Program-made: the position numbers and the translations under genes | The notes under the pieces: generated by a model | What the model was told of the DNA's origin: nothing | Database searches by the model: none | Seen by the model: the letters and a program-made list of their open reading frames with translations, nothing else | Part shown: in pieces, positions 8,069 to 61,180 of the stretch | Layout of the letters: every line of letters begins with the position of its first letter | Position numbering within the stretch: position 1 is the stretch's first letter | DNA from: Lepidodermella squamata | Lineage: Eukaryota > Animalia > Gastrotricha | Direction of reading: 5' to 3' | Length of the DNA stretch: 64,000 nt | Assembly: GCA_047495785.1 (NCBI GenBank) | Contig: JBLDXI010000043.1 | Coordinates: forward strand, 124,001-188,000

Positions 8069-8469
8069 TAGGGTAAGGTTACCTAAAGCTGCATAAATGT
8101 TTTCGACTTTTGTCATACACTTGCTATTCATCAGCTATGAGATTCCCCTGGCTCATCTTTTTGACCATCAAGATTCCGAACCGAAATTGGTAGGCTAATT
8201 CCTCACCGTTACCGAGCTATTGTTGCAGTTTAGGTTCAGAAGTGAAACTTTTATGCAATATAGGGCACATCTCGTGATAATATCTCTCGTCGGTGCCCTC
8301 GGCACGATGGCTCGGTAACGGTGATGAATTAGCTCATGGAAAACTTTGAGCCTACTCATTTCGGTTCGGAATCTTGATTGTCAGAAGATGAGCCAACGGA
8401 ACCTCATGGCTGAGGAATAGCAAGTGTATGACAAAAGTTCTACATGCATATTTAGGTAACCTTGCCCTA
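8069..8469. mobile_element. TA-flanked MITE with long imperfect inverted repeats
   Basis: tagggtaaggttacctaaa...tgtcatacacttgctattc...ttccgaaccgaaat...caccgttaccgag is mirrored by ctcggtaacggtg...atttcggttcggaa...gaatagcaagtgtatgaca...tttaggtaaccttgcccta. Confidence 0.8.
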
Positions 8470-8481
8470 ATTTATTTGATC

Positions 8482-28247: not shown

Positions 28248-28577
28248 TTTTGGCTGAAATTCCCTTAGTATCACTGCATAAATAAATCTTTATTGTTCAA
28301 TATTAAATCTTGACTCGAGCTAAACATTAAACATAAAAACGGCGAATTCTGGTACGGGGTGGAAGCCTAGAAGGGAAAGAGCTTTCCGACTATCCCAGCT
28401 CTCAATCCATGCGGGCAATCAGGCAGCAAACTGACAAGAAAAACTTCAATTAGTCATACACATTGGCGGGTTTATTGGACTGCATACAAGTAATCAGATT
28501 TATAAATATGTGGTGGCAAAACATGAAACATAAAATTGTCCCAAAGTCCTGGAAATATTTGAGATTTTTGAAAATCC

Positions 28578-29392
28578 TCACAATTCGTCCTTTTTATCCT
28601 TTTTCGCAGCAGAAGCAGCTCGTTTCTTCTCGGCCTTGTAGAAGTGCGCTTGCTTCTTCGGGTCTAGCAAATCCACAATCTCCTCGCCGGATTTCCCGTT
28701 CCCAAGCGCCTCCAGCGAGTTCAAAATCGTGTTGATATAGATATTCTTGTGCAAATTGTCGTCATGCGTCTTGAACCACTCGGTGATTTCAGGCGTGAAA
28801 TAGTCCCAGAAATGCTGCATCCAACGATCGTCCGGCTTCACATTACCCGGCAGCTCTTTCAACACATTCTTCGCCCATCGATTGACGAGACCAATCGCAG
28901 CCGGGTAGAATTCGTCCTCCTCGCCAACCGCGAACGTCACCCCGGCCTTCATGTAATTCCGCCATGTTTGAACGATGGTTTTGAACAGTTTTGACGGCTG
29001 GCCGGGTCCGTCGACGAATTTCGACGCGCCCTTAGTCGGCAGCTGTTGTAGTTGGATATAGCGGTCGTGGAATCGAGCTTTCATTAAAGCCATCGATCGC
29101 CTAACATCAGCATTGGTATCCTCGCTGATACGACCAGCTTCCTCCTCAGAGTCGAGCAATTTCACGATTTTTTCAGTCATTTCTTGCCAGAAAACGTCGC
29201 GTAAGTTTCCGTCTATTTCCTCGTTTGCCATCGCTCGACGAGACCATTCATCGAGTAAATCGGCTAGTTTGCCCTTCAGCACTTGTTTGTTCTCGTTTTT
29301 GGCTCGCATTTGAGCCAACGGATGGTTGTTGACTCGAACTGCCATCAGATTGGTGATCAGATGGGTTTTGACAAGTCGGGCCCATTCCTTGA
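28578..29392 (-). pseudogene. 3' half of an ER-luminal (KDEL) protein gene interrupted by the 31.6-kb insertion
   Basis: Open frame ending KKDKKDEL-stop; joins in frame with 60977-61180 (...ESEEAT-L-KEWARL...). Confidence 0.85.
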
Positions 29393-32300
29393 TGGGGGCG
29401 CGACTCTGGGAGTTCCGAAGGAACGCCAGTTCCTTTACGCGTGTTTTACACATACGCCGTAGATTACCACGAACGAAGTGAGATTTCATCCCAACAGGGG
29501 GGCCCGAGAACGCGTTGGTTAACAGGACATACTCCGATCGACTTGCCCGATTTATGGTGGTATCCTGGACCCCTCAGGACCTCCCAGAAACTTTTTCAGC
29601 TCAATCGGACCTTCCGTTGATTTTCTAGAAATTAGGACGGTTTTTACCTATTTTACCGTATTTTTTAGTCACGTGACCTGGAATGGGTAGTATACGACAG
29701 GACAGTAGGAGGATATGATAGGTACACCAAAAAACAAACCACGCTGACCAAAGCTTCCGAGCCAGCTGACAGGCTGGCCCCTCGCCCCTGGGGGAGAGGG
29801 GCCCCACAATAGCCCGCGACAAAAGAGCAAACGACAAAAAGGCAATATAAATAAAAGTCAAGGTCGATTGAAAAAACCTGCGGCAAATTGTTTGTGCATT
29901 TTGCACATTAATCTATGGGTTTACCCGTAATCGACTACGGAGAATCCGAATATGAAATCCATTTTATTATAAAGCAATGATAACCCCATGATAATCCTTC
30001 CTAAAGTTTTCTGGCTCGCGCGGCTGCGTCGCACTCGCTGAAAGAGTTGCGTAACTTTCACCACCTAACGACGCCTCGCTGAGATATGAAACTTCGAACA
30101 AGCACAACAAGGTTTTTTCCAACATGTTCAAGCTGACAGCTAGAGTTTCGCAATACAGGTTAGTCCACAAATACAGAATACTACCTTTGAAAACCAACTT
30201 CTTTGCAATCACGGCGACATTTCATTTCTTGTGAACGATCAACAGAATCATACTTATTCGTCGTTATTCAGTCGGTATTCAGTTTTCTAACCATATTTTA
30301 TCTCATCGTTCTGGTCAAAATAACCAAATTCGCTCGGAAACCAAGTTTTTCCCACCCAAAATGGTCTTACAACAAGTCGAATATGTTCTTTACAAGGAAA
30401 TGTTTCACGTCATCAACAATTTTTTATGCTATTTACTTCAACCCTGCTTAATTTTTTACAAACATCAATCAAAACTTCCAAGTAAGATTCAACATGAAGT
30501 TCAACATTTCGCAAAATACGTTTCGAAGTACTTCGAAACTTCAACTTAAATTATATTATCCAACCTTCATGTGTTGTTCTTTGCGTTCTCGTCATCAGTG
30601 ACATCGATTCTACCAATTCATGTCATTCAATTGTTACCCTAATTTTTTTTACAACAAACTCTCGAAACTTCAAACTTTCAAAACATGGTCGTAGGTTCCA
30701 ACCCGATCTCTCCTTTTCTACTCTTCAATTTGTTCTTTAACCCTCACGCATTCGTTCTTTACGTTCTCGTCATCAGTGACATCGATTCTACTAATTCATG
30801 TCTTTCAATTGTTACCCTGATTGTTCTTTACAACAACCTCTCTAGACTTCGAAACTTCAACTTAAATTATATTATCCAACCTTCATGTTTTGTTCTTTGC
30901 GTTCTCGTCATCGGTGACATAGATTCTCCCAATTCATGTCTCGCAATTGTTACCCCGATTAATTATTACAACAACCTCTCGAAACTTCGAAACTTCAACT
31001 CAAACCTTCTTGTGTTCTTCTTTGCGTTCTACTTCTACCGTACCCTAATTTTGTTACCCTAATTGTTTTTACAACAAACAACAAACTGCAAGTTGGACAT
31101 TGCAAATTAAACACATTATACACATTAAAAAAGTCACATTATACCAAGGAATCCCTGCAAGCTTATACCAATCTGCAATAATTGGTTGAATTAAGATTCA
31201 TGTGATTCGCTGAAAGAGTTGCGTAACTTTCACCACCTAAAAACTTAAGACGCCTCGCTGAGATAAGAAACTTCCAACAAGAACTTCACAATAAGGTTTT
31301 TTCGAACATGTTCAACCTGACAGCGAGTGTGTTGCAATTCAGCTTATTCCACAAATTCACAATCCTCCATTGAAAACCAACTTGACTGAATCACCGCGAC
31401 GTTTGCTTTGTTGTAAACGATGAACAGAATCATACTTATTCGTCGTTATTCAGTCGGTTTTCTATGCGTATTTCATCTCAACGTTATGGTCAATGTGACC
31501 AATTTCGTCACCTAACGGTTTGTTTACTGCTCTCCAGGCCGACAGGAGATCATAAATTGACGATAGATACAAGAGAGCAAACGACAAAAGAGCAAGTCTT
31601 ATTACTGATAAGTTACTGTCCAAGGTCCAAGGTCGTGGGTACGAACCCAAGCTCCAAGCTCTCGTTTAACTGCTCTTCATGCTCTCGCTCTCTCAACCTC
31701 ATGTTGGCGATTTCTTCGTCACCGAGTTTAATTCAACTTATTCATGTCATTCAATTGTACTCTGATCAATTCTTTCAACAATGTTCCGAAACTGTGAAAC
31801 CTCGATAGGCAGCTCGAGGGTTCGAACCCAAGCTCTCGTTTAACCGCTCCCATGCTTTAGTTCTCAGCGTAGTCGTTATCATCGACATCGATTTAACTTG
31901 TGGATGTAATTCCATTGTACCCTGCTTAATTTGTTACTCAACTTTTTTTAAAATTTGAAATATCGAAGGAAGGTCATGGGTTCGTACCCAAGCTCATGTG
32001 AACCTTCAACATCACTCAAGCTCTGGTTTAGCTGCTCTCTAATGATATCTGTCATCCTTATACTTTTGGTCTCGGAATTATTTACTAGTGATGGTTAACT
32101 AGCGTGGTTAACAGGTAATCCGAAAACTGTTAAAAAGTACTCAAAATACGTGTAGACGACTCGGTATTAAGACGGTGTGTTCCTCTTTATTTTTATGAAA
32201 CGGTCGAAGGTTCGAATTCAACCTTTCGTTCAACTGCTTTGCGATGATTTCGTTCATTCCCAAGCTCTCATTCTCGGCATTAACGTCATTACCGACATCG

Positions 32301-35263: not shown

Positions 35264-36557
35264 TGGGGGCGCGACTCTGGGAGTTCCGAAGGAACGCCAG
35301 TTCCTTTACAAATGTTTTACACATACGCCGTAGATTACCACGAACGAAGTGAGATTAACATCCTAAAAGGGGGTTCTGAAATCGAGTTGTCTACTTTCCA
35401 CAACTCCGGTGGACCTGGCCGATTTATGGTAGCATCCTGAACCCCTCAGGACCTCCCAGAAGTTTTTTCAGCTCAATCGGACCTTCCGTTGATTTTCTAG
35501 AAATTAGGACGGTTGTTTCCTATTTTACCGTATTTTTTGGTCACGTGACCGGGAATGGGTAGTATACGACAGGACAGTAGGAGGATATGATAGGTACACC
35601 AAAAAACCAACCACGCTATCCAGAGCGTCCAAGCCAGCCTACAGGCTGGCCCCTCGCCCTTGGGGGAGAGGGGCCGACAAGAGATCTACAATGGGAGATT
35701 GCGACAAAAGAGCAAACGACAAAGAGGCAAATTTATAAAAGTCAAGGTCGATTGAAAATAACCTGCGGCAAATAAATTGTGCATTATGCGTATAAAAATG
35801 CAGGTTTACCCGTAATCGACTACGGAGAATCCGAATATGACATTCATTTTGTTTTATAACAACGATAATTCCTTCATAATACGAAATTGCAACGGAAGGT
35901 CTAACCGAAGCTGTCATTTTACTCCTCTCCATCCTCAAGCTATCGGTCTCGGCGTTTTCGTCATCATTGACATCGATTCAACTTGTTAATGTCATTTGAA
36001 TTTACCTTTAAACATTTCTTAGACAAATTTCCAGGGTCAAAGGTCGCCGATTTTAACCTAAGGACTCGTTCAACTGCTCTGCAATGATTCCAAGCAAAGG
36101 TCATGGGTTCGAACCCAAACTCTGGTTTAGCTGCTTTTAATGATATATGCCAACGTTATGCTGTCGTTCTCGACGTTATCATCATTACCGACATCCATTT
36201 AGTTTGCACATGTCATTCAATCGAAGTTATCCGTGTGCTCTCGTTCTCAGCGTTATCCTTATCAGGAACATGCATTCAAATAATCCCAGTCATTCAATTG
36301 TACTTTGCTCAATGTACAGAATTTTGTGAAAAATTGAAATTTAAAAGTGTTCGAAAGTGAACCCAAGGTCACGTTAAACTGCTCTCCTATGATTTCTGTG
36401 ACCCTCATGGTCTCGTTCTATATATTTATTATTAATTTATTCGTTTATAATTAAATTTATTATTAATTTTTAAATTTCCAAAGGAAGGTCTTGGCTTTGA
36501 ACCCATTCGGCGAATTTTACTACGTAATCTATAACATAATGATTACGATAAGCCAAG

Positions 36558-36995
36558 TTACAAGGCGACGACAGGATATGACGGCATTCCCGAATGCATC
36601 GTCAAGATGGCCAAGCCCTCGATTGCTCGGCACCTCACAGTGCTCTTCAACTTGGCTATTCGAGATGGCGTATTTATTGACGATGCGAAAACGGCCATCG
36701 TTACGCCGCTGCATAAGTCCGGTTCTAAAGCTGAGCCTTGCAATTTCAGGCCAATTTCGGTCACCTCACCGCTGGCTCGTACATTTGAGCGCTGCCTGGC
36801 TACACAGCTGAAGGTCCATCTACGCACGATCAAATTCCTTACGTCAGCACAGCACGGGTTTCGACAATACCATTCGACTGACACTTGTGTGGCATCATTC
36901 ACGGAATGTTGGCGTCATTTGCTCGACAGTGGAAATGTAGTTGGAGCTATTTCGATAGATCTTTCGAAATCATTCGATACGCTGAATCTCGAGGG
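36558..36995 (+). mobile_element. Non-LTR retrotransposon (CR1/L2-like) reverse transcriptase fragment
   Basis: KATGYDGIP, TAIVTPLHK, NFRPISVTS, QHGFR and IDLSKSFD; truncated before the YADD motif. Confidence 0.85.
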
Positions 36996-39590
36996 TATGC
37001 ATAGTTTCTGCCATGTCATTTAATTCTACCCTGATTAAATTTTTTTAAGAATTTTTTAAAACTTTGAAACAACGGAGAATCCGAATATGACGTTCATTTA
37101 GAGACGAATCGGTTTTCACTCTGTATGTTCCCAATTTATTCCGAAATCTTGATTGTACCCTGCTTAATTTCTTAAAAGATTTGTTTGAAAATTTTCCAGG
37201 TCAAAGAAAGGTCGAGGGTTCGAACCCAAGCGTTTGTTTACTGCTCTCCAGGCCGACAGCAGATCATAAATTGACGATAGATACAAGAGAGCAAACGACA
37301 AAAGAGCAAGTCTTATTACTGATAATCTCCAAGGTCCAAAGTGCAAGGCTCAAGGTCCACGGTTCAAGGTCCAAGGTCGAAGCCAAGCTCTCGTTCAAGT
37401 GTTCTCCAAGGATTGTGCTGTCCTGCAATTATCTGTTTCATTTTCAATTCACTATTGTCAAGCTGCTCTCTATTGGGCGTCATAGCTTTGAAATAAATAA
37501 ATAAATAATTCTGTCATCCTAATGCATTCGTACTTGGTGTTAAAGAGCAGGGAATGCGAAAAATGTTCAAAGTCAATCAAAATACGTGTAGACAATTCAG
37601 TGTTAAGGCGGTTTGTTCCTCTTTGTTTTGTTAAAATCCTGGTTATTCAATTCCACCTTGATCAATTGTTCACAATAAGTTCTCAAAATACGTGTAGACG
37701 ACTCGGTATTAAGACGGTGTGTTCCTCTTTATTTTTATGAAACGGTCGAAGGTTCGAATTCAACCTTTCGTTCAACTGCTTTGCGATGATTTCGTTCACT
37801 CTCATGCTCTCGTTCTCGGCGTTGAAGTCATTACCGATATCGATTTAGTTTGCACATGTCATTCAGTCGAAGCCTGCTTAAATTTTTATAAACATTTTTC
37901 GAACTTTGAAATTTCAGAGGTTGGTTGAGGGTTCGAACCCAAGCTTTCGTTCTACTGCTTTGCGATGATTTCGATCACTCTTATGCTCTCGTTCTCGGCG
38001 TTAACGTCATTACCGATATCGATTTACTTTGCAATTGTTATTCAATTTTAAATTTTACCGTGCTTAGTTATTTATAAGAAATTTCTAAAAATGTGAAAGT
38101 TAAGTGTTCGAACCCTCTTGTTAAACTGCTCTCCAATTCTTTCATCAGTATGCTCTAGTTCTCGGCTTTTTGGTCAACACCGACATCGAATTGCCTTAAA
38201 CATGTTAATCAATTGTACCCTGCTTACTTATTTATAAGAATTTTCTAAAAATTTGAAATATCTGAGTTTGAACCCTCGCTCTCGTTAAACTGCTCTCCAA
38301 CGAATTCTTTCTTCTGTATGTTCTCCTTCACTGCGTTATCCTCACCGGGAACATGGATTCAACTAATCCCAGTCATTCAATTGTACTTTGCTCAATGTTT
38401 TCAAAGAATTTTGAAAGAAAGAATTTTGAAAGAATTTTTCCTTTGAAGCATTAAGCTTGAACAACGAGCTTGACACAAACGAGCTATATTCAAAGGATCT
38501 ATACTTTTCTTGAACAAAACTTCAAGCAATGTGAACCTTCAACATCACTTGGGTAAAATTTTACTCTGGTCAATTTTTGTCAAGGATTTTTTCTAACATT
38601 GAAATTGAACCACTGAGGCAAGCACTCGCGTAACTGCTCACCAATGATGTCTTTCAGACTCCTGCTCTCGTTCTCGGCGTTACCGTAATCAGAGACATCG
38701 ATATAACATATCGACAAAAAGCAAACGACAAAAGAGCAAATCGTATCACTGATAAATTCCAAGGTCCAGGGTTGAAAGTCCAACGTCCAAGGTCGTGGGT
38801 TTTAACCCAAGCGACTGGGAATGATTTCGTTCGTCCTCATGCTCTCGTTCTCGGCTTTAACCGACATCGATTTATTTTGCAATTACCGTGCTTAGTTATT
38901 TATAAGAACTTTCTAAAAATTTGAAATCTCTGAGTAAGGTTAAGGGTTCGAACCGTAGCTCTTGTTAAACTGCTCTCCAAGGAATTCTTGCATCCGTATG
39001 CTCCAGTTCTCGGCTTTTTGGCCAACACCGACATCGAATTGCCTTGCACATGTTAATCAATCGTACCCTGCTTAGTTATTTGTAAGAACTTTCTAAACAT
39101 TTGAAATCTCTGAGTTTGAACCCTCGCTCTCGTTAAACTGCTCTCCAACGAATTCTTTCATCCACATTTCCACATTTTACGTTCTTGTCGTTATTGCTAA
39201 ACCGACATTGAATTAACCTGTCCGAGTTATTCAATACTACCCAGCTTGAGTTTTTTTTTAGGAATTTTATGAAAATTTGAAATTTGCGCCGCACTTGCCA
39301 AAGAAGTTGCGTAGAGGGTCAATTCCGCGTTCGGCTTTTTCCGCATGTATACTTAAACTACTCAAACTTGGGTAGGTCCCGGGTCTTTTTCTGTCTCTTG
39401 CCTATGTGTTCACTGTCATAGAGGTGACATAGGATATTTTGATAATAAAACTATCAAACTGCAAATCAAGTTTCAGTGCAGATTAATAAGTTGTTAACCA
39501 CATTTTAAAGTGAGCAGTTCAAAAACGCGCTTTCTTATCTTCATATTCATATGCGCAGATGAATAAAAGATAAATTTAAAAGATAAAAAT

Positions 39591-39667
39591 GTGTCGTGAC
39601 TGGGACTCGAACCCTCCATTAACTGCATTTCACATCGATTCACCGAAACCACTCGGCCACACAACAC
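39591..39667 (-). pseudogene. tRNA-like sequence (pseudo-tRNA or SINE head)
   Basis: GTGTTGTG/CACGACAC acceptor-like stem, A box TGGCCGAGTGG and B box GGTTCGAGTCC; the anticodon arm pairs poorly. Confidence 0.55.
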
Positions 39668-40357
39668 ATCTGACATATCCATCGCAAATCAATTTATAAA
39701 TATTCAAAGAGAAAGAAAATAATCAAAAACAGTTTCCAGCGCCTTCCGGGAATCGAAGGCATCTCAATCACAATATAGTTTGCTTCGCTTAGGCATTGGT
39801 TCGATTACTGCTCTCATCACGTTTTTCCTTTCCATTTTTTTTTCTTAAAACAGATTAATTCCTGTCCAAATTTTTGCAGAATGAGCAATAAAAGTGGAAA
39901 CTTTTCCATTCACGTGGATTTTCATGAGTACAAAGTGCATGCCTGTCATATGGCTGACACGCGATTCAGCATCAGCTGTTTAACGGCGCAGCGGCGGCAA
40001 CATAATAAGGTTCGATCGGGTATACACTAATCATTTAAAACGATTTATTTCTCCTGAAAACAACCTCTAATTCCTTAAGCATTAGAATTACTTATGCTGC
40101 CAGCTCCAATCAATCCATCTTTCGCTTGAATCGATAACAGTGTGACAATGCTGCTGTCTCAGGTTTGCTAGTATATTATTGCTAGTTCATTTCACTATTC
40201 CCACTGTGATTACAGCTACTGGATGAAATGGCGATTTGCAGTCGGCGTTGGTTTACCACGGTCACTAATTTCAACCAGAAAGCCGTGAGTACATTTTTTT
40301 CCTCATTGATTTTATTTACTATAGTAAATTTTATTGATTTTTTCATTCATAAACACA

Positions 40358-43002: not shown

Positions 43003-43249
43003 ATATCAAATTTGTTCAAAAAAGTTTTCAAACTATGAAATACCAAAAGATTTTCTACTATTCTGGTCAAGCCCAATGTATCATATTTTTATTTCTTCTT
43101 TCATGTTCCAGGTTGCGAATCGAATCAAATGGCCGATGTTGCACGCTTAATCGAATCGCTGAAATTGATTTCGGATTTTTGAAACTTGTTACCTTGAAAC
43201 TTGTTATTATTAATTTTCCTAGTTTTTATGATGAGAATTTGTAAGTGGA

Positions 43250-49200: not shown

Positions 49201-52200
49201 CAACACACACCCACCAGCTTTGCGGCTAATGTTGTGGCGACCAAAAGAAGCAGTGAAAAAGCGACTACCGGGTATGCTCTTGAGAATAGTTATTGTAAAT
49301 ATTTTCAAATAATATTCCAAAAACAGGTACAGATGTCGTTGCTGTCGATCCAAACTACAATCGCCGGGGCCTGCCTCAGTGGCGCTTGTTCACGGAAGCA
49401 TGCATTCGTCTGATCATGAAAATGAGAGGCACGAATCTGCAAGCTGGCCCTGTCGAGAAGTTCGAGATTCGACCTCCCGAGGCTCGTATCTTTGCGTCAC
49501 CTGCTATCTACCACGCGGTGTTCGTCATTGACAGGAAAAACGGACGACCATACAACCCGATGGTTGATCCTTACATCCGTTTTTTTGACGGCTTCAAGCG
49601 GGAGGTCCGAATCAACGATTGCAGTTTGCGCATCGCGCTCGACTATCTGGCTCAGCAGGACCAATCCAATCCAGCTGTTCAAGCACTCACGGAAATTTTC
49701 GAACTCTTGGTCGAAGGCGATCCTGTCTACGTTGACCGGTAACGAACTTTACGTTTTTATAATTTTCGGAATATTTCAATTGTACGCTGAACTAGGTATT
49801 TGCACGTCACCAATAAGGCGGCGATAATTCCAGTCCTATCCACCATCTCTCCGCTCAACCGCTTCAACTTCTTGTATCACGTCGTCATGACATTTGGTCG
49901 AATCGAAGAAGAGGCTACTACCTTTCCGGCTGGGCATCTCCGGGCGGCATTTGTTCGATCGGGGCTCATTCGGGTCAATCCTGAAGGCGAGCCGACCAAC
50001 CTTCCTGCCGACGTGAGGTCTCTGAAGCGTCGCGTCATTCTCGAAATCTTCGCTTTCCTGCCAATCGGTGTCAAGAGATTCGATTTCTACGTCGCGACTC
50101 TGAAATCCATGTTCGAGCAGTTTTTCTTTGGCGATGGAGGCACCGACAATCTCTCGACACTGACTGACTGGGAAGCGATTGAACGCGAAGTTGACGAGGA
50201 TATTGTCCGAGCGGAAGGAGAAATGAAGCGGTCTGTGGTTGAGGTGACGCATTCGCAGCTTGTCGGGAAATTGCCGCTACCACCGCTGTCGGATTTCACT
50301 GACGCTACGTCGTGTCAACCTTTGGAATGGGTTCCGAGTCTTCAACGACAACCAGGTCAGTCGGACCAGTCTTTCCAGGAGCAGCAGGCGGCTCTGGCTT
50401 TCGGTACGAAGACACTCGAACGCTTCCGAAGCAGAGCTAGCTTCAAGCACATCGCACTGGTTGGTCCTCCTGGGGCTGGAAAGACAACGCTGGCGCAGAT
50501 CCTTGCCATGGTTGCCGTTTCTAAGGGACTACGAGTTGTCATTACTGCTTTGACCTCGGAGCGAGCACGAGTTCTTGGCGGTCGGCACATCCACCTGCTT
50601 TTTCCTTTGCCGGTTAAGCAAATACCGTACAAGAATGTAATGGCGTATGCTGACGGCTGCCTCAAGAATCTGTGTTTCAAGACTACGCCATCTGTTGTCC
50701 TATATCGGGCTGACGTCTTCATCATCGAAGAAATTGGGCTGGTCTCTGCTGAAACCCTGGAAATCTTGGACACAGTTATGAGGAGTCTTACAGGTAAGCA
50801 AACCAGCATTCAATTATTACTGGTATTTATAGTTTTCATTAGGAGTCGATGCGAAAATGGGTGGCAAATTGATCATTGCTACCGGGGACTTTGCTCAGCT
50901 CGAGACGATCAATGGTGAGAGTTGATTTATTGCAATACTCACATGTATATTGTTTTTGTTTTAATTATCCCAGGTCGATCCTTTTGGGAATCAACACAAT
51001 TGTACCTCAGCTACGACGTCGCATTGTTGAAACATTTCGTTCGGGCTGCCACTGACCCGCTACTCCAGCGGGTGCTGTTGATTTTGCGCCAAGCCATTCT
51101 TGACGAGATTGACCGGGACTTCATCCTCAAAGCTGTCACTAGCACGTGCACCTTTTACGACACTTGGGACAATGTTCCGTTCCTTGTCCAGCGGATCGTC
51201 CCAACAAGAGAAGCTGAACAAGAGGTTAGTTAGTTGCGGAAAACTTTAGTGGTCAATTTTAGTGCCTTTCATGCAATAATTCATCAGGTCATTCGGAAGT
51301 TCCTGCAAGACGCTAGTCTCAGTGGCAAGACTTTGAAAACAGCTCTGTGCATCGACGAAGTGAACACGCGTGGTGCCTGGGAACCTCTTCACCGTCCCGA
51401 ATGGAAAAAAGCTATCAACAAACAGTCACTCAAGCCCGAGAACTTAACCCTCTTTGTTGGTGCTGTGGTTGCTATGACCTACAATCACGTAGCGTCGAAC
51501 CCGCAACATTCCTTCTCCCAAGGGCAGCTAGCTCTGGTGACGCAGTTGCCGGAAGACATGGCCGCACCGGATGCCAAAATTTCTGTCCGCTTGCTTCCTC
51601 CAGGGCTGCGTGACATTGCACCAGATGAGGCTTGGCCAGAAATAAGTGTGGGCCGCCATCGGGACGATAACATTGTTGTTGGCGACAACAAAACGCACCT
51701 GCGTCGTGTTCAGTTTCCGCTGCGGCATTACATTGCCTCGACTATTCATCGTGAGTGCTAACCTTGTTTTTATATTCAAGTATATAAAGATGTTAATTGT
51801 TTTCAGGAATCATGGGTTCTACCTGCGAGAACGGCGTTGCGGCCAAGATTGCTTCCAACCAGAAGGTACGTATTGCGAATAATAACTGTGGATATTGATA
51901 TGTTCAATGTACTGTAATGAAGGGCTACGTGCTATGGGAACGGGCGCAGCTTGCTGTCATTCTCTCGCGGTGCCGTTCACTTGACCGTGTGTCATTTGTT
52001 GGCGAACGCGCAGACATCACTGTGGCCATCGAAAGGCTGTTGATGGCAGTTGATGAGCCATACGAGGCTATCGTCGCATCGCTGCAAACGCTGGACGTGC
52101 TGCCTAACTCAACAGTCGCCAGTAACTGGTCAGCCGGACGACAGCAGCAGGTCAGCGTCCCCGACGAACTGCCCGACATCACGTTCCGCGTTTTACGAAC

Positions 52201-53058
52201 AACTTCCGGGTTAGTCCACTTACTTATTTGGCGCTTTGTATAGTCAACTCACTGATTGCGTATGTCCCATTATATATAGAGTCTTGACAGTTCATATTTC
52301 TATAACCATTTTACTATATTTCAACTTAGAATAAGTCGAACGTTTTCAAGAAACATTTTTCTTATAGATCATTCACGATCGAGCAGCTTGGCGATGCTCA
52401 AACTTCCATCCCATTGTAAGTATGGCATTGTTCATCTGCTTTATATACTATTCAAAATTTCTTCATAGGCCTGCAACCGCTGACCAGGCAAGCTCCTCCG
52501 ATGCGCCTGTTGTCCCACGGTTAGTATAACCTATCAATTCCTTTTCATTGCTTCAAATTCTTCTCAACTCATCAGAATGCCGACATTGCTAGACTTTTAC
52601 CGCGTCGTTGGCCCTGATTTGTCGGAACGCGAGCCCAATGGCTTCGTGTACCAATTGGTCCAGGTGGCTCAGCCGTGGGTCAGCTACTGCGGCGAAACTG
52701 AGCAACCGCCTCTAAAGCGACTTTACGACCACAATCACAGTAAATACAAGAGAGACTAAAAAAATCGAACTGCTAACATTTGATTTCAGATGCAGGGGCC
52801 GCGATGACTCGCGGCAAGCAATGGCATTTGTACGCCGTCGCTCGTGGCTTGCCTGATGACGAAACCAGGTTGAACCTGGAGAAAAGGTGCCAGGACCTTA
52901 TTACAGCGCAACCTGAGCTTTTGCCGTGGCAAGTTAGGACCAAGTTTGAGTCCTACGTGGACGAAATCAACGCTCGCCTGCATGGGTCCACTGCTGTAAT
53001 TCGTTACGGCGAGTTAGACGAGGCTAAGGTTCACCGCCTGCGTACGATCTCCTTGTGA
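43250..53058 (+). CDS. Multi-exon (~23) Helitron-like Rep-helicase with N-terminal Zn fingers and a C-terminal GIY-YIG endonuclease, roughly 2,600 aa
   Basis: Rep motif 1 WFGTITCN (~47620), motif 2 RNEFQ...KSHLHMG (~48295-48350), motif 3 SYLTSYV (~48880). PIF1 motifs GPPGAGKT, FIIEEIG, GGKLIIATGDFAQL, FVRAATD, QFPL...STIHRIMGST, AQLAVILSR. GIY-YIG motifs GFVYQL..SYCGET..KRLYDHN..GAAMTRGKQW..LNLEK. Confidence 0.85.
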
Positions 53059-53409
53059 GTCAGCTGATGGATGTCATTCTTTTTACTCAATCCTTTCACT
53101 TTTCAGCACGTCGACAATTAGAGTAGCACCGGCGCCACCGTCAGCGCATGAAGAAGCAGGTGAACTAATCGACCAAGATCCGCCCCCAAAGCGGTAAATA
53201 GATTTAAGTTCACATTTGCTTGTAGCTTTTTACTATTATTTTCAGAATTCATCTCGCAAATAATTGTTCGCCGTCTTGATGTTTCTGCTGATCTTCCGAT
53301 AAATGAAATGTTCCAATTCAATGTTTTTCCTAGTAGTAGCCAATAAACGTATTGCACTTTTTCTAATAGTGTTTATTGAATCAGAGTTATCAGATCGACA
53401 TGACTTAAT

Positions 53410-53632
53410 ATGAATCAAATCGCCTCGAAACCGTAATTTTTCTGATCCTTGTGCTTCGTCCATTATATAATTTTTCTAAAAGATTACCTAAGCTGATTGC
53501 CATGCTACGCCAAGGCGACGCCGTTAAAGTGAGGCAATCGGTTGTTGACGATGCGAAATACATACCCGTCACACTGCATGAAGCCATCGACAGGAGCAAC
53601 GAGGATGCACCTGGGAATTTCAAGTGTGTCGC
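53410..53632 (+). pseudogene. 5'-only duplicate of the accessory gene
   Basis: Near-identical to 55683-55905 (LPKLIAMLRQG...NFKCVA), then breaks off. Confidence 0.75.
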
Positions 53633-53699
53633 TTTGGGTTGGTTATTTTATTCAATAATTGTGCTGCCTGGTGTTAACTAAAACTTCTGTTTTTTGCAG

Positions 53700-53920
53700 C
53701 TAGTGGTGGTTCTTCTGATGCACCTATTCTATGTGACAACTGCAGAAGACGATCGGTGCCCTTTTTCGACATCGACATTGCTGTCGTCGAAGAGCCGGTA
53801 TCTGGACGCAGCTATGGTGCTCTAGCAGTGCGACAAGTCTACGAAAACTGCTCTCTGTGCCGTTGTTGTCGTCACTATTTGCGGAACGGCGATGCTCGAT
53901 ACTCGCCGCAAAATCACGAC
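53700..53920 (+). pseudogene. Diverged duplicate of a Rep-helicase Cys-rich exon
   Basis: DAPILCDNCRR...FDIDIAVVEEPVSGRSYGAL...YENCSLCRCCR matches ~44297-44510. Confidence 0.75.
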
Positions 53921-54348
53921 AGGTCAGTAAATTTCATTCATATTGTACTACTATAGATTAGACTAGCCAGAATTAGCACTGCACTGATTTGCTATCCCCT
54001 TGACCTTACTTTGAAACTTCAATTTTTCACAAAACTCTTCAAAAACATTGAGCAAAGTACAATTGAATGTCTGGGAATAGTTGAATCCATGTTCCTGATG
54101 AGGATAACGCTGAGAACGAGAGCATACGGATGAAAGAATTCGTTGAAGAGCAGTTTGACGAGAGCTAGGAACGAACCCTTAACCTTGCTGAGAGATTTCA
54201 AATTTTTGGAAAATCTTGTAAAAAACTAACCAAAACTAAGATTACGGTAACGCCGAGAATTAGAGGATATTGAAGCTTCACTTTGCTGGAAGTTTGTTTA
54301 AAACAAACGATCCTTTAAGCTTTCAGCTCGTTTGCTGCGATGTCGTTA

Positions 54349-54605
54349 TCACGATTCCGGAATAAAATAGGGAACACACCGAGAGAAAAACGAGTCGTCT
54401 ACAAGCGCTTTTTGACAAGACAAGTTAATTACCAGAATAATAGATACAGTCGGCCAACCGTAACCATTACCAGTGATTGTGGTACCGCTGAAGGGCTCTG
54501 CAGACGAAATTACCGTGTATTTTGCATCGTCTTCCACCAGCTCTTCCACTTTGTCAACTCTGCCCTGTTTCAGCAAGGCTGCGAGTTTTGAAATCCTTGA
54601 AAATG
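54349..54605 (-). pseudogene. Decayed 5' fragment of an accessory-gene paralog
   Basis: RISKLAALLKQGRVDKVEELVEDDAKYTVIS resembles RLPKLIAMLRQGDPVKVRQAVVDDAKYIPVT. Confidence 0.6.
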
Positions 54606-55156
54606 CCGGTTTTCCAAAATATTGAATTGGCCATGAATTACTCTGGGCACGTGGGCGGCATTATTTAGCGATATGTAGTGTAGTTCGGGAGAATGAGATT
54701 GGAAAGTTTTCACGCTTGACAAAACGTCGTGTGGATTACATTCAAATCCGAAGAAGATAACCGGATTTTGTTTATCGAGTTTATCGAGTTTATCGGGTTT
54801 CTCTCTGAGCCAACAACAAAGGAAATGCGCAGGATCTCATTCGAATTGATTACGGGAGCAATTCTGGTAGATTGATGAGGCAACATGAATCATTTTCCTG
54901 CTTTACATATGTTCGTAGAAACATGAATGGTAGAGAATGCCAATCAGCGTCGCGCAGCTCTAAACTTCTAAGCTTCCAACTTCTAACTTTCAAGCTCCGT
55001 GACTTCAAGATAACTCAATATATGTAGCAGAACTTCGTCTGGAAGGTTTTCAGTGAAGCATCAGTAGAGCTCACGTGTTTGAATGCAGATGATTTCATAA
55101 GGCCGATCGAACTGCTTCAAATTCCCAATATAGTATTCTTTATTTCTTTATTTTAG

Positions 55157-55432
55157 GTACCGATTCGTCGAAAAAAGGGAAATCACCTTCAGAAGGCCTC
55201 ATCTTCAATCCGGTTCACCCGAACGATGATCATGGCTTCATCCCTTGGGCAAGTCGTGTCGCCCCGTGTACCGTGCGGCGTTGTCTCTTCTGGTACTTGG
55301 CAGCCCCGATTTGTCACGCGTCGACATCGGTGACTTGCTCAGTCATACAGTGTCGCTGCCCCGCACGAGATGCCACGTAGCCTGAATCTGCCACACCTAG
55401 CTAACGACTTCTGGGCACTGACAAACCCCGAG
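55157..55432 (+). pseudogene. Diverged duplicate of another Rep-helicase exon
   Basis: gtaccgattcgtc...ttcaatccggttcacccgaa...gacttctgggcactgac matches ~45631-45967 with an internal deletion. Confidence 0.75.
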
Positions 55433-55679
55433 TAAGGCGGTAAGTTGTAAAAATTGAACATTTGCTTGCAACTTTTTACCAATTTTTCAGAATTCATCTC
55501 GCCAACAATTGTTCGCCGTCGTAACATTCCGGGTGGTATTTTCTAACACTGAACTATCTTCTGCTAGAAATAAAGTTGAATTTTTGTCTTCAATTAACGT
55601 TTTTCTTGAAATAAGCAATAAACATTTTTTTTAAATAGTGTTCAATAAATTTAGTTTTGTCACTAAGAGTTCAGTTAAC

Positions 55680-56772
55680 ATGATGAATCAAATCGCCGCT
55701 AAACCGTAATTTTTCTACTCCGTGTCTTTTCTCGTTTATTGCGGTTTTTTCATAGGTTGCCTAAGCTGATTGCCATGCTACGCCAGGGCGACCCTGTGAA
55801 AGTACGTCAAGCGGTTGTTGACGATGCGAAATACATACCCGTCACACTGCATGAAGCCATCGACAGGAGCAACGAGGATGCACCTGGGAATTTCAAGTGT
55901 GTCGCTCAGCTGCTGCATGTGCGTTTCAAGCCGGGTCGCAAAGTCAACGTCAACTCCAAGGACTCGATCTTAAAACAACGCACTCCTCCCGAAATTATAA
56001 CGGAATTCACGTTCATTTTTCGGTAAGTCACATTAGAAATAACATTAGAAAAGTTGGTGTCTCAAAAATAACGCATCATGCTAGGCTGGATCGTGAATTT
56101 GAAGACGCCGCTTTCGCGGTTATAGTTCCGCGCAACGACATCACTTCATATGTCTTGCATTTTAAGCAAGAGTTGCGACTTGGTGCCATGGCTTGTCTTG
56201 CCAATCCCAATTATCTGGGTCGGTGGAAAGGAACACAGGTTTTCACGGTCGAGTTGATTCTTCCTGCGGCAGCCAGTCCGCTCAGGCATAATCTTCTGCC
56301 AAGAAGCGGTTCCCTTAGCCTCGAAAGTTGGCAAGGGTTTCGGTTGGAGGTGAAGCGCGTCACCGTCGTGCAAGTTCTGTTTCACGCCGAGGCTTGCTGC
56401 TTGCCAGCTTGCGACAGCCGTTACGGCCTGGACTGCTTTTGCAATACCATGAGTGTTGCCAAACCGCTGCTCGAACTATTTGCAGTGAGGTTGAAGGCGA
56501 AAGAACTCGGCCCTGTGGCGACTGAACCATACTCGTCCCACAAATTAGCCCTCCAGTTGCTTCCCGAAGCACTGGTCAAAGGCAGAGCTCCTCGCGATTT
56601 GGAGAGGATTGAGCAACACGTTCAGAACGCTATCGGGAACCATGTCGGCGGCTTCGTTGTCACCCTCTGGTCTAAGCCTGTTCACTGCGGTGATAGCCGT
56701 GTTGCTCAATACACCCGTCTTCACGTCGTCGACCTGGAAGTTCGTGGTGAACTGCTCATGATGGAATTATAG
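55680..56772 (+). CDS. Accessory protein of unknown function with a C-x4-CD(S/G)RYG-x2-C-x-C motif (3 exons)
   Basis: Exons ~55680-55705, ~55756-56022 and ~56085-56772 with GT-AG introns join in frame; full-length similarity to the paralog at 58247-59322. Confidence 0.75.
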
Positions 56773-58246
56773 TGTTCCTTGTTTTTATGTTAACTGCTTC
56801 ATTAATTTTCCGCTTCTGAATAATTGTTCTTTTGCTGACATTCGCGCTGTAATCTGTAATTGTGTCGACATTATTTGGATTAATTTCGATTTAAATTTAA
56901 CGGTTTTGCCTGTGCCTTTCCACTTACGTTTGCTCATCAGCTGGAGCTCATCATAGCGATGAAAACAAATCATTCAATTTCAGATTTATTGTGTACATGA
57001 TGCTATGCGAGTTTACTCATACTCACACTCACACTTTATTGCGCAATTCGCCTTTCGACATTTAGCACTTGGATCACATGTCATCACAGTTTGTAAGTGT
57101 CCTGTGTAAAGGTGTAATATATGCCTCCTGAAATTTAGAGACGACTTGGTGCTCTCCTGGTTTGTGTCTGATTTTCAAATAAAAACGATGTACCGCAACA
57201 ATTATGGTTAAACTCATTTTTATGGCGACGCCGTATTTGCGTCGTAAGACAAGATCCAATGAAAAGCGTTCTCCAGCAATAGGTCTTACAGGTTTCATTT
57301 TTGTATTCGGAAATGGTTTTGTAAATTAGGAAAGTTGGTTAAAATGAGCCAGTGAGCAAGTTCTAATATTCAGATTTTTCTTGGCGATTTTGCGCCAATA
57401 TCATTATCATTTATTATTCAACTCCAGAAACTTTACGAATACGCCGGCTAGACGTGTCTTCACTAGTGGCACCTTTGCAATGGAATAATGAAATAACTGG
57501 AAGATACTTCTCACTGTAATTCGGATGAAATTAATGATGAACAATAATGAACAACCGTGCGTTTTATCAATAACCTACGCCATCCCGAACATTTTTCAAG
57601 GTTGTCTCATCCCTTAGTTCCTGCAGATACCTTGATACTGTCTAACAATAGCTTTAAAAGTTGTAGACGACATGGTGTTCCCTCGGTGTTTTCCCCATTT
57701 TAGTCTGAAATCGTGACCTTTTTCGTGACCTTTACTGTAGCGTGGTTCTATCGAAAAATCAGTGCAGCAAAGGCTATCTTGCATGTTTCACAGCAAAATA
57801 TCTTTAGATAAGCTCGCTTCGCTCGCTACAATCACAGCGCAAGCTAATTTGAAGTTTGCGGTCGACTTTCTGAGTAGAACAGAAGTATCAACTTGAGTTG
57901 AAAACGTCATTCGTAACCAACTTGGAAAAACAAATTTTATTTTATCTGGCAGGTTAGCTGACCTATTTTCCTTCCTGCAAACCTTGATTTACCTGTTTTG
58001 CAAAGTCATGCAGAGCATTTCATCTTCATCGTCATGCTCTCCTTCCCGGCGTTATCGTAATCACTGACATCGATTTTACTTGTTAATTTAAGTTATTCAA
58101 TTGTCCCGTCAGTTTAAACCGTTAGTTCCAAATAAAATGTTTTTATTTTTCAATTAATTAATTAATCTACTAATGATAGCGTGGTACAACAACAAACACG
58201 TTGACATATGAAATCTGAACGAAGCCTTCATACTCGGCATGCATAC

Positions 58247-59322
58247 TCACGGGTCGGCCATTCTAGCCAGTGGTTCACCTAGAACTCGTAAGTGCGCAAG
58301 ATGAACCTTCGTGAACGTTGAAATGTCTCCTTTTTCTGCCGCCACTGGCTTTGACCAAAGTGTTGCCTCGAAACCTCCGTCATGATTTCTAAACGAATCA
58401 AGAATATGATCCTCCATTCCCAACAGATTGCCAACTATGCGTCGTTTCAATCGGTTCTCGCTGAACAACATCTTTGCGAGGCTTACCGAACAGAAAGGTT
58501 CCGTAGCAACTGGGCCCAGTTCATCCGCTTTCAGACGGAGTGCGAAAATGTCTACCAGAGGTTCCAGCGTCTTCTTTTTCATGCAGTAACATTTCATTCC
58601 GTACCGGCCATCGCACGCGGTCTCAGGGCATGTTTGCGGAAAATAACTTATATCAACGATTTCCAAACCTGCAAGCCGCACTCGATAAGTTGTCCATGAC
58701 TCCAGACTGAGGGTCCCGTTGGCAGGAAACATGTCAAAGTGAACAGGGAAGAGTGGTGTAGGTACTATCACATCACTTGAAAACGATCTATTCCCACTCC
58801 ACGGCCCGATCCATTTTAAGTTGGGCAGCAAAACAATACCGCCGAGAGTAAAAAACTTACTGTAGTACATTGTAGTTGCAGTGGCTTCATCCTTCGACAC
58901 AAGAATGACAAAGGTCGTTGACTCGGCTGTATCCGTGCTAATTAAATATAATACGGACATAAGAATAGTGACATGAAAATTAAAATGCAAAAAAGTGTAA
59001 AACAATGGATGAAAAAAGTTTACCGAAAAACGAGAGTGTACTCGGCACTCCTACTTTCTTCAACTTTCAATAGTTTCGACGACGGTGGAAAAGATTTCAG
59101 CACATCGCCGCGGTTTATTTTCACTTGTTTTCCTGGTTTGAAAGAGACATGGACGAGCTGGGCCAATACTTTAAAATCTCCCGGAATATTCGAATTCTCG
59201 CGTTCAATTGCTTCACTAACACCAACCACTGGGTAACGCCTGTCATCAAGCACCAGGTCGCGCACGTCTTCACCGCGGCGCAGAAGAACGCTCAGTTTGG
59301 ACAGCCTTGCCTTACCTGACAT
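58247..59322 (-). CDS. Second apparently intact accessory-family paralog, convergent with the first
   Basis: MSGKARLSKL...VLAQLVHVSFKPG...YTLVFR, intron, ...GPWSG...LSLESW...CPETACDGRYGMKCYC...ELGPVATEPF...TLWSKPV. Confidence 0.75.
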
Positions 59323-59709
59323 TACAATTGATTTTTACTGTCTACTTTATGAAAACTTAAATTAATAATTCATATTTTGAAACTGCGGAAGAAAATGGCA
59401 AAGCTACGGCGATGTGGTAGCTTGTTTGAGTAGGCTAAACGGACATGCTTAATATAAACCATGAAGGGATAAAATTCATTGAAAGCTATTGGTTACGCCG
59501 GTTCTCGCAATTGCGCAAGTTCAAGTGCGCAGAGCGATAGCACATCGCACGCCATTAACAGTATACCCGTCATTAATTATGAGGGATGACGGCTTTGAAG
59601 CGCAGCGTTATTGCTATAGTTTTTGGCTACTTTAAAACTGAAATTTAAGACTGCCTCTCCTGGCGCTCTTCCTTAACAAAATTGCTTTAAAATGGCTACT
59701 TTAAAATTG

Positions 59710-60792
59710 CTCAATCACGTATTGCCTTGTTCATTTTAATCAATTGTACCCTGCTTAGTTATTTAGAAGAATTTTCTAAAAAAAACCCTCGCTCTCGTTA
59801 AACTGCTCTCCAACGAATTCTTTCATCCGTATGCTCTTCACGGCGTTATCCTCACCGGCAACATGCATTCAATTAATCCCAGTCATTCAATTGTACTTTG
59901 CTCAATCTTTTTAAAGAATTTTGTAAACAATTGAAATTGCGAAGCAACATGAAGGGTTCGAACCCAATGTCACGCTCTCCTTAACTGCTCTCCAAAGTTT
60001 TCTTTCATCATCATACTCTCGTTATTGGCGTTATTTGGTCACCGACTTCAATTCAACTTATCCTTGTCATTCAATTGTAACCTCAACAATTATATTCAAG
60101 AAGTTTCCAAAACTTTGAAACTTCAATGCAAGGTCGTTGGTTTGAACCCAAACCCTGGTTTAACTGCTTTGCATTGCTTTCTTTCATCGTCATGCTCTCG
60201 TTCTCGGCGTTATTGTAATCACCGACATCGATTAAACTTATCGACAAAAAGGAAACGACAAAAGAGCAAATCTTATTGACTATGAATTTCAAGTTCCAAG
60301 GTCCAAGGTCGGGGGTTCGAACCCAAGCTATTTAAATTTAAGCGTATCAAGCTAAATTCGAAAAAATGAATATTTTTATGAAACTGGAAAATTCATAGGA
60401 AGGTCATGGGTTCGAATGATTTCTATCATCCTCATGCTTTCATACTCGGCGTTGTCATCATTACCGACATCGGTTCAACTTGTCGAAGCTATTCAATTGC
60501 ACCTTGATCCATTTGAAATTCCAAAGAAAGGTCGTAAGTTCTAATCCAAGCTCTCGTATTGATTGAACTCTCAATAAGGTAGTGAAGGATAGTCTTTGGT
60601 TCGAACCCAAACCCTCGTTTAACTGCTCAGCATCGATTACTTTCATCCGTATGCTCTCAATCTCGGCGTTAACGTCATTACCGACATCGATTTAGTTTGT
60701 ACATGTCATTCAATTTTGTCATGTCCCTGCTTAAATTTTTATAACAATTTGAAAATTTGGAATTTCAAAGGAAGGTCAAGGGTTCGAACCCA
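59710..60792 (+). repeat. Diverged satellite monomers next to the 3' end of element B
   Basis: Same gggttcgaaccc / atgctctcgttctcggcgtt / gtcattcaattgta motif order as 30.5-39.3 kb. Confidence 0.8.
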
Positions 60793-60976
60793 GGAAGAAC
60801 ATTCAAATTTACAATTCAATTTCATATTTCATCAACATTGGGGTGAGGGGGAAGCACCGTCCCCTCCAACGACGTGGAGGGGAACTCCAAGGGGTGGTTC
60901 GAGTCCTAACCTATTACCCAGGAGAGTAGAGAAAAAGAAAAGGCTAGCGCAGCGTAAGCCTTGGAACTCTCCTGGA

Positions 60977-61180
60977 GAGTTGCTTCTTCTGATTCGATCT
61001 TCTGATTGCTGATATCGTCGAAATAATCCTGCTCCTCGTCATCGTCATCGTCATCATCTGAACATAACATCAAACGAAATGAGGTGGAACGAGGAAAATT
61101 ACTATCAATTTACCGGCGTTTATCAAGGCGAGATGAGCGGTGAGAAGAATGCCTAGAATCAGAAAAAACCGAGAAGGCAT
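60977..61180 (-). pseudogene. 5' half of the interrupted ER-luminal protein gene
   Basis: Exon 1 61180-61114 encodes MPSRFFLILGILLTAHLALINA (signal peptide-like); 56-bp GT-AG intron 61113-61058; exon 2 encodes an Asp run then EEQDYFDDISNQKIESEEAT, cut at 60977. Confidence 0.85.

What the first reader, a model, noticed from the sequence alone, without database searches (positions are those of the whole stretch)
28578..61180. Host ER-protein gene split across 31.6 kb and reconstructable in frame
Seen: signal-peptide exon (61180-61114), acidic exon start (61057-60977) and 29392-28578 give a 320-aa ORF running MPSRFF...ESEEAT-L-KEWARL...KKDKKDEL. Neither half has a stop or frameshift. Inference: the insertion is recent or heterozygous, implying recent activity of the element. 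The KDEL protein has no family I recognise.
Basis: partly seen in the sequence, partly recalled or inferred. Interest (0 to 1): 0.75.

Follow-up and report, generated by a model that had tools for sequence, protein, structure and literature searches.

The report
Orphan ER gene split by transposon array
A single-copy gene for a secreted-pathway protein that ends in the ER-retention signal KDEL has been cut in its second exon by a 31.6-kb pair of rolling-circle (Helitron-like) transposons. The cut is clean and looks young, the protein has no detectable relatives, and this kind of exon hit has been seen several times in this genome, so it is a tidy but fairly ordinary case.

Summary
On the minus strand there is:
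- a signal-peptide exon (61180-61114);
- a 56-nt GT..AG intron;
- an acidic exon piece (61057-60977);
- 31.6 kb away, a 270-codon open frame ending KKDKKDEL-stop (29392-28578).

The pieces total 963 nt, that is 320 codons plus a stop.

Own-genome comparison puts the ends of the repeated DNA exactly at 29393 and 60976. Both host flanks are single copy. The coding sequence abuts the element on both sides, so this is an insertion into an exon and not a large intron.

The insert is two head-to-tail Helitron-like units:
- Unit A (29393-35263) is 99.98% identical to copies on two other contigs.
- Unit B (35264-60976) is about 97.6% identical to its nearest copies among the four array regions I compared.

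The KDEL protein is single copy. It drew no hit in Pfam, the word search, a 1.84-billion-protein phmmer search, PDB sequences, the ESM Atlas or metagenome contigs.

The genome is very probably the gastrotrich Lepidodermella squamata, a little-sampled phylum. The assembly is a primary assembly of one individual with about 3% heterozygosity, so an intact second allele is plausible but untested.

The scan has already reported exon-splitting insertions of such elements on other DNA of this genome.

The parts
61114..61180 (-). Exon 1: start codon and signal peptide (22 codons plus the first base of a split Asp codon)
   Evidence: It has a charged n-region (MPSR), a 16-residue hydrophobic core and a small residue (Ala) just before the likely cleavage site. 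The donor is G|gtaaat.
61058..61113 (-). Intron 1, 56 nt, gtaaat...tgttatgttcag
   Evidence: Without splicing the frame stops 14 codons after the signal peptide.
60977..61057 (-). Exon 2, 5' piece: acidic stretch (seven Asp, then EEQDYFDD...ESEEAT); host DNA ends at 60977
   Evidence: It is single copy in the genome: query positions 978-1201 match only themselves. It contains no GT, so there is no possible donor before the junction.
35264..60976 (+). Helitron-like unit B, 25.7 kb. It carries a 180-bp satellite (40358-43002) and fragmented helicase-type ORFs (about 44.3-53.1 kb).
   Evidence: Its 3' end ...GGAACTCTCCTGGA meets host DNA directly. AAA_30/PIF1 P-loop hits fall in ORF 49800-50918. 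It is about 97.6% identical to copies on contig C42.
29393..35263 (+). Helitron-like unit A, 5.9 kb, no long ORF; it starts TGGGGGCGCGACTCTGGGAGTTCC
   Evidence: It is 99.98% identical over 5888 nt to copies on contigs C33 and C20. The A|B junction at 35263/35264 has the same sequence as array junctions elsewhere in the genome.
28578..29392 (-). Exon 2, 3' piece: last two bases of a Leu codon, 270 codons (KEWARL...KKDKKDEL) and the stop
   Evidence: It is single copy, has coding-type composition by codon position, no Cys, no N-x-S/T sites and no hydrophobic segment.
28471..28476 (-). AATAAA polyadenylation-type signal about 100 nt after the stop
   Evidence: read directly.
60916..60920 (-). 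Possible cryptic donor inside the element's end (TGG|gt), phase 0
   Evidence: Inference only.
29405..29408 (-). Possible cryptic acceptor inside the element's start (cag|A), phase 0
   Evidence: Inference only. Used together with the donor it would leave 72 nt (24 stop-free codons) of element sequence in the mRNA.

Best explanation
A single-copy, two-exon gene of a gastrotrich (very probably Lepidodermella squamata) encodes a 320-residue soluble protein of the ER lumen. The protein has a signal peptide, a poly-Asp/Glu stretch, an all-helical body of about 270 residues with no cysteine and no N-glycosylation site, and a C-terminal KDEL.

The second exon was hit by a rolling-circle (Helitron-like, group-2 type) transposon family. 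This family inserts just after the word CTNGA, with no target-site duplication, and tends to stack head to tail. Two units now sit there, antisense to the gene: A (5.9 kb) and B (25.7 kb).

Shown:
- the exact element ends;
- single-copy flanks;
- the in-frame empty site;
- the near-identity of unit A to other copies;
- the absence of any detectable relative of the protein.

Inferred:
- This allele is most likely a null that makes at best a 72-residue truncated product.
- The event is young, or the other haplotype keeps an intact copy.
- The protein is an ER-resident factor of unknown role, perhaps a chaperone or escort protein.
For: - **Sequence and arithmetic:**
- **Element boundaries:** repeat similarity starts at the left junction and stops at 60976, with no other genomic match to either flank.
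- **Junction sequences:** junctions in arrays elsewhere read ...CTCTCCTGGA|TGGGGGCGCG.... The window has host-CCTTGA|TGGGGGCGCG on the left and CTCCTGGA|GAGTTGC-host on the right.
- **Two units:** two copies of the 5' terminus, at 29393 and 35264, and an internal 3' terminus at 35237-35263.
- **Recency:** unit A is 99.98% identical to copies on C33 and C20.
- **Coding character:** codon-position GC, codon usage, and P(270 open codons) = 1.4e-7.
- **No room for an intron or another gene:** there is no GT in the 5' piece of exon 2, and no start codon or signal peptide in the 3' piece.
- **No relatives:**
- **Organism:** contig C33 is 2,937,808 bases. That is the N50 printed for the L. squamata assembly in PMC11660948.
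Against: - No uninterrupted allele, paralog, ortholog or transcript was found, so nothing independent shows the two halves were ever one mRNA.
- The frame match alone has a 1 in 3 chance.
- If the T at 29393 were host DNA rather than the element's first base, the joined frame would be shifted by one.
- Unit B is about 2.4% diverged from its nearest copies among the four regions compared, so the disruption may not be very recent.
- The assembly comes from multiple-displacement-amplified DNA, which can form chimeras. Junctions exact to the base at the element's ends argue against that here.
Confidence: 0.85

Rival explanations
1. The gene still works. The whole 31.6-kb array is removed from the pre-mRNA as a giant intron, using a donor 59 nt inside the element's 3' end and an acceptor 13 nt inside its 5' end. 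This would leave a 24-residue in-frame insert.
For: Both candidate sites are in phase 0, and the 72 retained bases have no stop. Both halves of the gene are intact.
Against: - The frame match and stop-free stretch have roughly a 1 in 10 chance together.
- The only intron seen in this gene is 56 nt.
- The donor is mediocre.
- The element lies antisense and is full of repeats.
- No transcript evidence was available.
Confidence: 0.05
2. The two halves come from different genes or loci. They were brought together by recombination between element copies at two sites, by a deletion, or by a mis-join or chimera in the assembly.
For: - Unit A is identical to copies elsewhere over 5.9 kb, which invites mis-joins.
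- The DNA was amplified by MDA (PMC11660948).
- No intact copy was found.
Against: - The two halves share strand and frame.
- The signal peptide and KDEL need each other.
- The 3' piece has no start of its own, and the 5' piece has no continuation of its own.
- Both flanks are single copy.
- HiFi reads of about 13 kb span unit A, and unit B is distinct enough to assemble.
Confidence: 0.07
3. It is an ordinary large intron that has filled with repeats, not an insertion into coding sequence.
For: A plausible acceptor (cccag|A) lies just upstream of the 3' piece.
Against: That acceptor lies inside the element, 13 nt from its first base. It is present in every copy of the element. No non-element, non-coding host DNA lies between the coding pieces and the element ends. 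The 5' piece of exon 2 has no GT.
Confidence: 0.02
4. The 270-codon frame is a chance open frame or a dead relic, not a gene.
For: No homolog was found anywhere. The protein language model's recognition score is low. The AlphaFold model has low confidence.
Against: P(270 open codons) is about 1e-7. The codon-position composition and codon usage are those of coding DNA. The frame ends in KDEL, has an AATAAA signal downstream, and is matched by a signal-peptide exon upstream. Orphan genes are common in this genome according to other notes of the scan.
Confidence: 0.02

Closest known systems
Soluble ER-resident proteins retained by the KDEL receptor (e.g. BiP, PDI, RAP/LRPAP1, Mesd/boca)
   Same: N-terminal signal peptide, no membrane segment, and a C-terminal KDEL preceded by a Lys/Asp-rich tail. 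Its size, helical character, lack of cysteines and Lys-rich helices loosely recall RAP. That resemblance is from my own knowledge.
   Different: No sequence similarity to any of them. Pfam, including the two RAP models, gives nothing. PDB sequences give nothing. The fold is unknown.
Helitron-like elements of group 2 (Helitron2/Helentron; HLE2 of the HELIANO paper, PMC11417382)
   Same: - Short imperfect inverted repeats near the two ends.
- No target-site duplication.
- Precise head-to-tail arrays.
- An internal satellite, as in DINE-1 Helentrons (PMC4067079).
- An ORF with a PIF1/AAA_30-type helicase P-loop.
   Different: The insertion here is after CTTGA and before G, not between T and T. 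Pfam does not see the Rep part. According to other notes of the scan, the transposase ends in a GIY-YIG nuclease rather than an AP endonuclease. I did not test that.
Transposon insertion alleles of host genes (classical TE-induced null alleles)
   Same: A mobile element sits inside a coding exon, both halves are otherwise intact, and the boundaries are clean.
   Different: The insert is unusually large (31.6 kb, two stacked units), and the interrupted gene is an orphan.

Membership tests
KDEL-retained soluble ER-lumen protein (functional class) | Cleavable N-terminal signal peptide | tested here: met
   By inspection only: MPSR, then a 16-residue hydrophobic core, then -NA. No signal-peptide predictor was available.
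KDEL-retained soluble ER-lumen protein (functional class) | C-terminal KDEL/HDEL-type tetrapeptide directly before the stop | tested here: met
   ...KKDKKDEL then stop at 28580-28578.
KDEL-retained soluble ER-lumen protein (functional class) | No transmembrane segment after the signal peptide | tested here: met
   There is no hydrophobic run in the 270-residue piece. The AF2 secondary structure is all amphipathic-type helices.
KDEL-retained soluble ER-lumen protein (functional class) | Signal peptide and KDEL on one polypeptide (one mRNA) | tested here: inconclusive
   This is inferred from the in-frame empty site. No intact allele or transcript was found.
RAP / LRPAP1 (Pfam PF06400, PF06401) | Match to the family's profile models | tested here: not met
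   No hit even at E = 10. Neither model finds anything in the whole genome either, so a diverged equivalent cannot be excluded.
Helitron-like element, group 2 (HLE2) | Short terminal inverted repeats | tested here: met
   The left end holds ...CTCTGGGAGTTCCGAAGG and the right end holds CCTTGGAACTCTCCTGGA, which are imperfect reverse complements.
Helitron-like element, group 2 (HLE2) | Insertion between T and T without target duplication | tested here: not met
   There is no duplication, but the site is CCTTGA|GAGTTG. The family's own habit is CTNGA followed by the element's T.
Helitron-like element, group 2 (HLE2) | Rep-helicase transposase | tested here: inconclusive
   Only the helicase P-loop is seen (AAA_30 at 3e-8, PIF1 at 6e-5). 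Pfam has no Rep hit in the neighbouring ORFs. The ORFs are fragmented.
Canonical Helitron (HLE1) | 5' TC, 3' hairpin plus CTRR, insertion between A and T | tested here: not met
   The element starts TGGGGG and ends CTGGA.

The most novel reading that the evidence does not exclude
The stacked Helitron-like array behaves as a giant new intron. Phase-0 splice sites built into the antisense ends of the element would let the host remove 31.5 kb and keep a working ER protein with a 24-residue insert. That would make this transposon family a source of new introns in a compact invertebrate genome.
Probability: 0.05. Interest if true: 0.7.

Novelty: new member of a known kind. Interest (0 to 1): 0.3.

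Why it matters
This locus gives a clean, datable example that this Helitron-like family is or was recently active and damages coding genes in a phylum whose transposons are almost unstudied.

In the matches listed and examined, it holds the family's only 3' end that meets host DNA rather than another unit. Together with the host reading frame, that fixes the element's ends to the base. The element starts with T and ends with CTGGA. The cut is after CTNGA, not after CTNGAT.

The locus also flags a single-copy, relative-less ER-lumen protein that current annotation is likely to miss, because the gene is split.

None of this overturns known biology.

Tried and rejected
**Searches with the 3' exon piece that found nothing:**
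- Pfam at E = 0.01 and E = 10. The only entries were sub-threshold TetR_C and Vps52 hits, which I read as noise.
- Word search of 5.8 billion proteins.
- phmmer against 1.84 billion cluster representatives.
- ESM Atlas.
- PDB sequences.
- Metagenome contigs.
- Exact-product look-up of the 303-codon ORF.
- Own genome at E up to 5.

**The two short 5' pieces** gave nothing in Pfam and are too short for the other tools.

**Structure.** AlphaFold2 without an alignment gave mean pLDDT 46. That is too poor for a fold search, so none was run.

**Internal duplication** of a W-containing helix motif: BLAST E = 0.21, not supported.

**RAP idea:** the profiles do not match, and no RAP was detected in the genome. 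It remains an untested lead.

**Dating unit B** by a genome-wide search returned only a few low-identity rows. I relied instead on the four array regions compared.

**Not done:**
- The 'big intron' reading was rejected on the boundary evidence.
- The joined 320-residue model was left out of all searches.
- The contig is not human.

Full report
**What is in the sequence**

On the minus strand, an ATG at 61180 opens a 22-codon signal peptide: MPSR, a 16-residue hydrophobic core, then -NA. It ends at a G|gtaaat donor.

A 56-nt intron ends in tgttatgttcag. After it the frame continues with seven Asp, then EEQDYFDD...ESEEAT, up to 60977. Without that splice the frame stops after 14 more codons.

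At 29392, 31.6 kb further on, the last two bases of a Leu codon are followed by 270 open codons. They run KEWARL...KKDKKDEL and end at a stop at 28580-28578. An AATAAA lies about 100 nt downstream.

The three pieces measure 67 + 81 + 815 = 963 nt, that is 320 codons plus the stop.

I translated and searched the pieces separately, by reference. The joined model was not built or searched. Nothing suggests the contig is human.

**It is an insertion into an exon, not an intron**

I searched the window's own genome with both junction regions.
- Left junction: many copies match from the junction inward. The 186 bases of the coding flank match only themselves.
- Right junction: similarity stops at 60976. 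The flank 60977-61200 matches only itself.

Elsewhere in the genome the same ends meet head to tail as ...CTCTCCTGGA|TGGGGGCGCG.... In the window the left junction is host CCTTGA|TGGGGGCGCG and the right junction is CTCCTGGA|GAGTTGC host.

The 5' terminus occurs twice in the window, at 29393 and 35264. An internal 3' terminus sits at 35237-35263. The insert is therefore two units: A (29393-35263) and B (35264-60976).

The final GA of the left host flank is the same as the element's last two bases, so the breakpoint could be drawn at several places within those two bases. Every such placement gives the same empty site, and it is in frame (...A T L K E W...).

No non-element host DNA lies between the coding pieces and the element ends. 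The 5' piece of exon 2 contains no GT. The plausible acceptor upstream of the 3' piece lies 13 nt inside the element and is present in all its copies. The 'large intron' reading is excluded.

**One base matters**

Earlier notes of the scan describe this family as inserting after CTNGAT and ending in that word. In every other 3' end of the family that I examined, out of those listed, the next thing is another unit starting with T. Those copies cannot say whether the T belongs to the end or to the start.

The window's right end is the only one of these that meets host DNA, and it reads CTGGA then G. Reading the T at 29393 as the element's first base needs no missing base and puts the host gene in frame. 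Reading it as host DNA shifts the frame, which then stops after about 45 codons by my hand reading.

I take this as evidence that the cut falls after CTNGA. The argument leans partly on the assumption that the two halves are one gene.

**Why the two halves are one gene**

- The 3' piece behaves like coding DNA. GC by codon position is 0.55/0.33/0.61, and codon usage scores best in the claimed frame. The probability of 270 open codons is about 1.4e-7.
- The 3' piece has no start codon with a signal peptide, yet it ends in KDEL. KDEL is only meaningful for a protein that has entered the ER.
- The 5' pieces supply exactly that entry signal and have no other continuation.
- Both halves lie on the same strand, in the same frame, and are single copy.

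What is missing is independent proof. No intact allele, paralog, ortholog or transcript turned up. I put the one-gene reading at about 0.85. The main rival is a join of two loci by recombination between element copies or by assembly error, at about 0.07.

**The element and its age**

The units carry short imperfect inverted repeats near their ends. They make no target duplication and stack head to tail. Unit B holds a 180-bp satellite (14.7 copies, 99% matches). It also holds a run of fragmented plus-strand ORFs, one with AAA_30/PIF1-type P-loop hits. Pfam sees no Rep domain.

This fits the group-2 Helitron-like elements described in PMC11417382, apart from the target site.

Identity to other copies:
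- Unit A differs at 1 of 5888 positions from copies on contigs C33 and C20, and is about 98.7% identical to two copies on C42.
- Unit B is about 97.6% identical to C42 copies over 5.5 kb.

So at least one of the two insertions is very young.

As a rough inference, suppose about one in five neutral changes (nonsense mutations plus indels) would disable the frame. The intact 893 nt then bound the age of the disruption to below about 2% neutral divergence at the 95% level.

**Organism and what it implies**

A note of the scan suggested Lepidodermella squamata. I checked this. Contig C33 is 2,937,808 bases, the exact N50 value printed for the L. squamata assembly in Table 2 of PMC11660948.

That paper reports:
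- a single animal;
- multiple-displacement amplification;
- HiFi reads of about 13 kb;
- a hifiasm primary assembly with only 72% k-mer completeness;
- heterozygosity of 2.99%.

An intact allele on the other haplotype is therefore quite possible. The raw reads and the transcriptome SRR1273732 would settle it.

Amplification chimeras are a formal worry. Junctions that coincide to the base with the element's ends and its usual target word are not what a chimera would give.

**The protein**

Nothing matched:
- Pfam;
- the word search;
- phmmer over 1.84 billion representatives;
- PDB sequences;
- the ESM Atlas;
- metagenome contigs.

AlphaFold2 without an alignment gave an all-helical model of low confidence (pLDDT 46), so no fold search was made.

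The mature protein has no Cys and no N-x-S/T site. It has an acidic N-terminus and a Lys-rich tail. A repeated W-containing helix motif hints at an internal duplication, but it is not significant (E = 0.21).

These features loosely recall the ER escort protein RAP. However, the RAP profiles do not match the protein and find nothing in the genome. That stays a lead, not a claim. In so poorly sampled a phylum an orphan is not surprising.

**Consequence for the gene**

As assembled, the reading frame runs 23 codons into the element and stops. This allele would make at most a 72-residue product.

A speculative alternative is that the gene survives by splicing:
- The candidate donor is TGG|gtaata, at 60918/60917.
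- The candidate acceptor is cccag|AGT, at 29406/29405.
- Both are in phase 0. Together they would leave 24 stop-free codons of element sequence.
- Chance alone gives this about one time in ten, and a 31.5-kb intron would be out of character next to a 56-nt one. I rate this at about 0.05.

**Verdict**

It is a clean, probably young insertion allele of an orphan ER-protein gene.

The scan has already reported exon-splitting insertions of such elements on other pieces of this genome, so the kind is known. The added value is the base-exact ends and target of the family, plus a gene that annotation is likely to have missed.

Noticed in passing
window 29393 and 60970-60977: Of the family's 3' ends listed and examined, only the window's right end meets host DNA. 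It reads CTGGA then G. So the T of the reported 'CTNGAT' target word is the element's first base, and the cut is after CTNGA.
   Followed up: partly
window 28578-29489 (minus strand): An ATG inside the element's 5' end (29489) opens a 303-codon chimeric ORF. It runs 33 element-derived codons straight into the host KDEL frame. The product would lack a signal peptide. This is probably a chance open frame.
   Followed up: no
window 40358-43002: A 180-bp satellite inside unit B, 14.7 copies at 99% identity. More diverged versions of the same repeat are scattered through the insert and in arrays on contig C42.
   Followed up: partly
window 4285-6579, 18384-19196, 21788-22603, 27648-28247 (plus strand): A run of long, apparently intron-free ankyrin-repeat ORFs. 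The first has 764 codons with about 20 repeats. The last converges on the KDEL gene's 3' end.
   Followed up: no
window 8428-11223 (plus strand): An uninterrupted 931-codon ORF with a dynamin-family GTPase domain at its N-terminus (Dynamin_N, E = 3e-12). The rest of the ORF has no Pfam match.
   Followed up: no
contigs C20 (3.09-3.18 Mb), C33 (10-50 kb), C42 (1.22-1.35 Mb), C99: Nearly all copies of this element family sit in a few large head-to-tail arrays. Blocks between arrays are identical, which suggests segmental duplication of arrays as well as transposition.
   Followed up: partly
This identifies the genome.
   Followed up: yes
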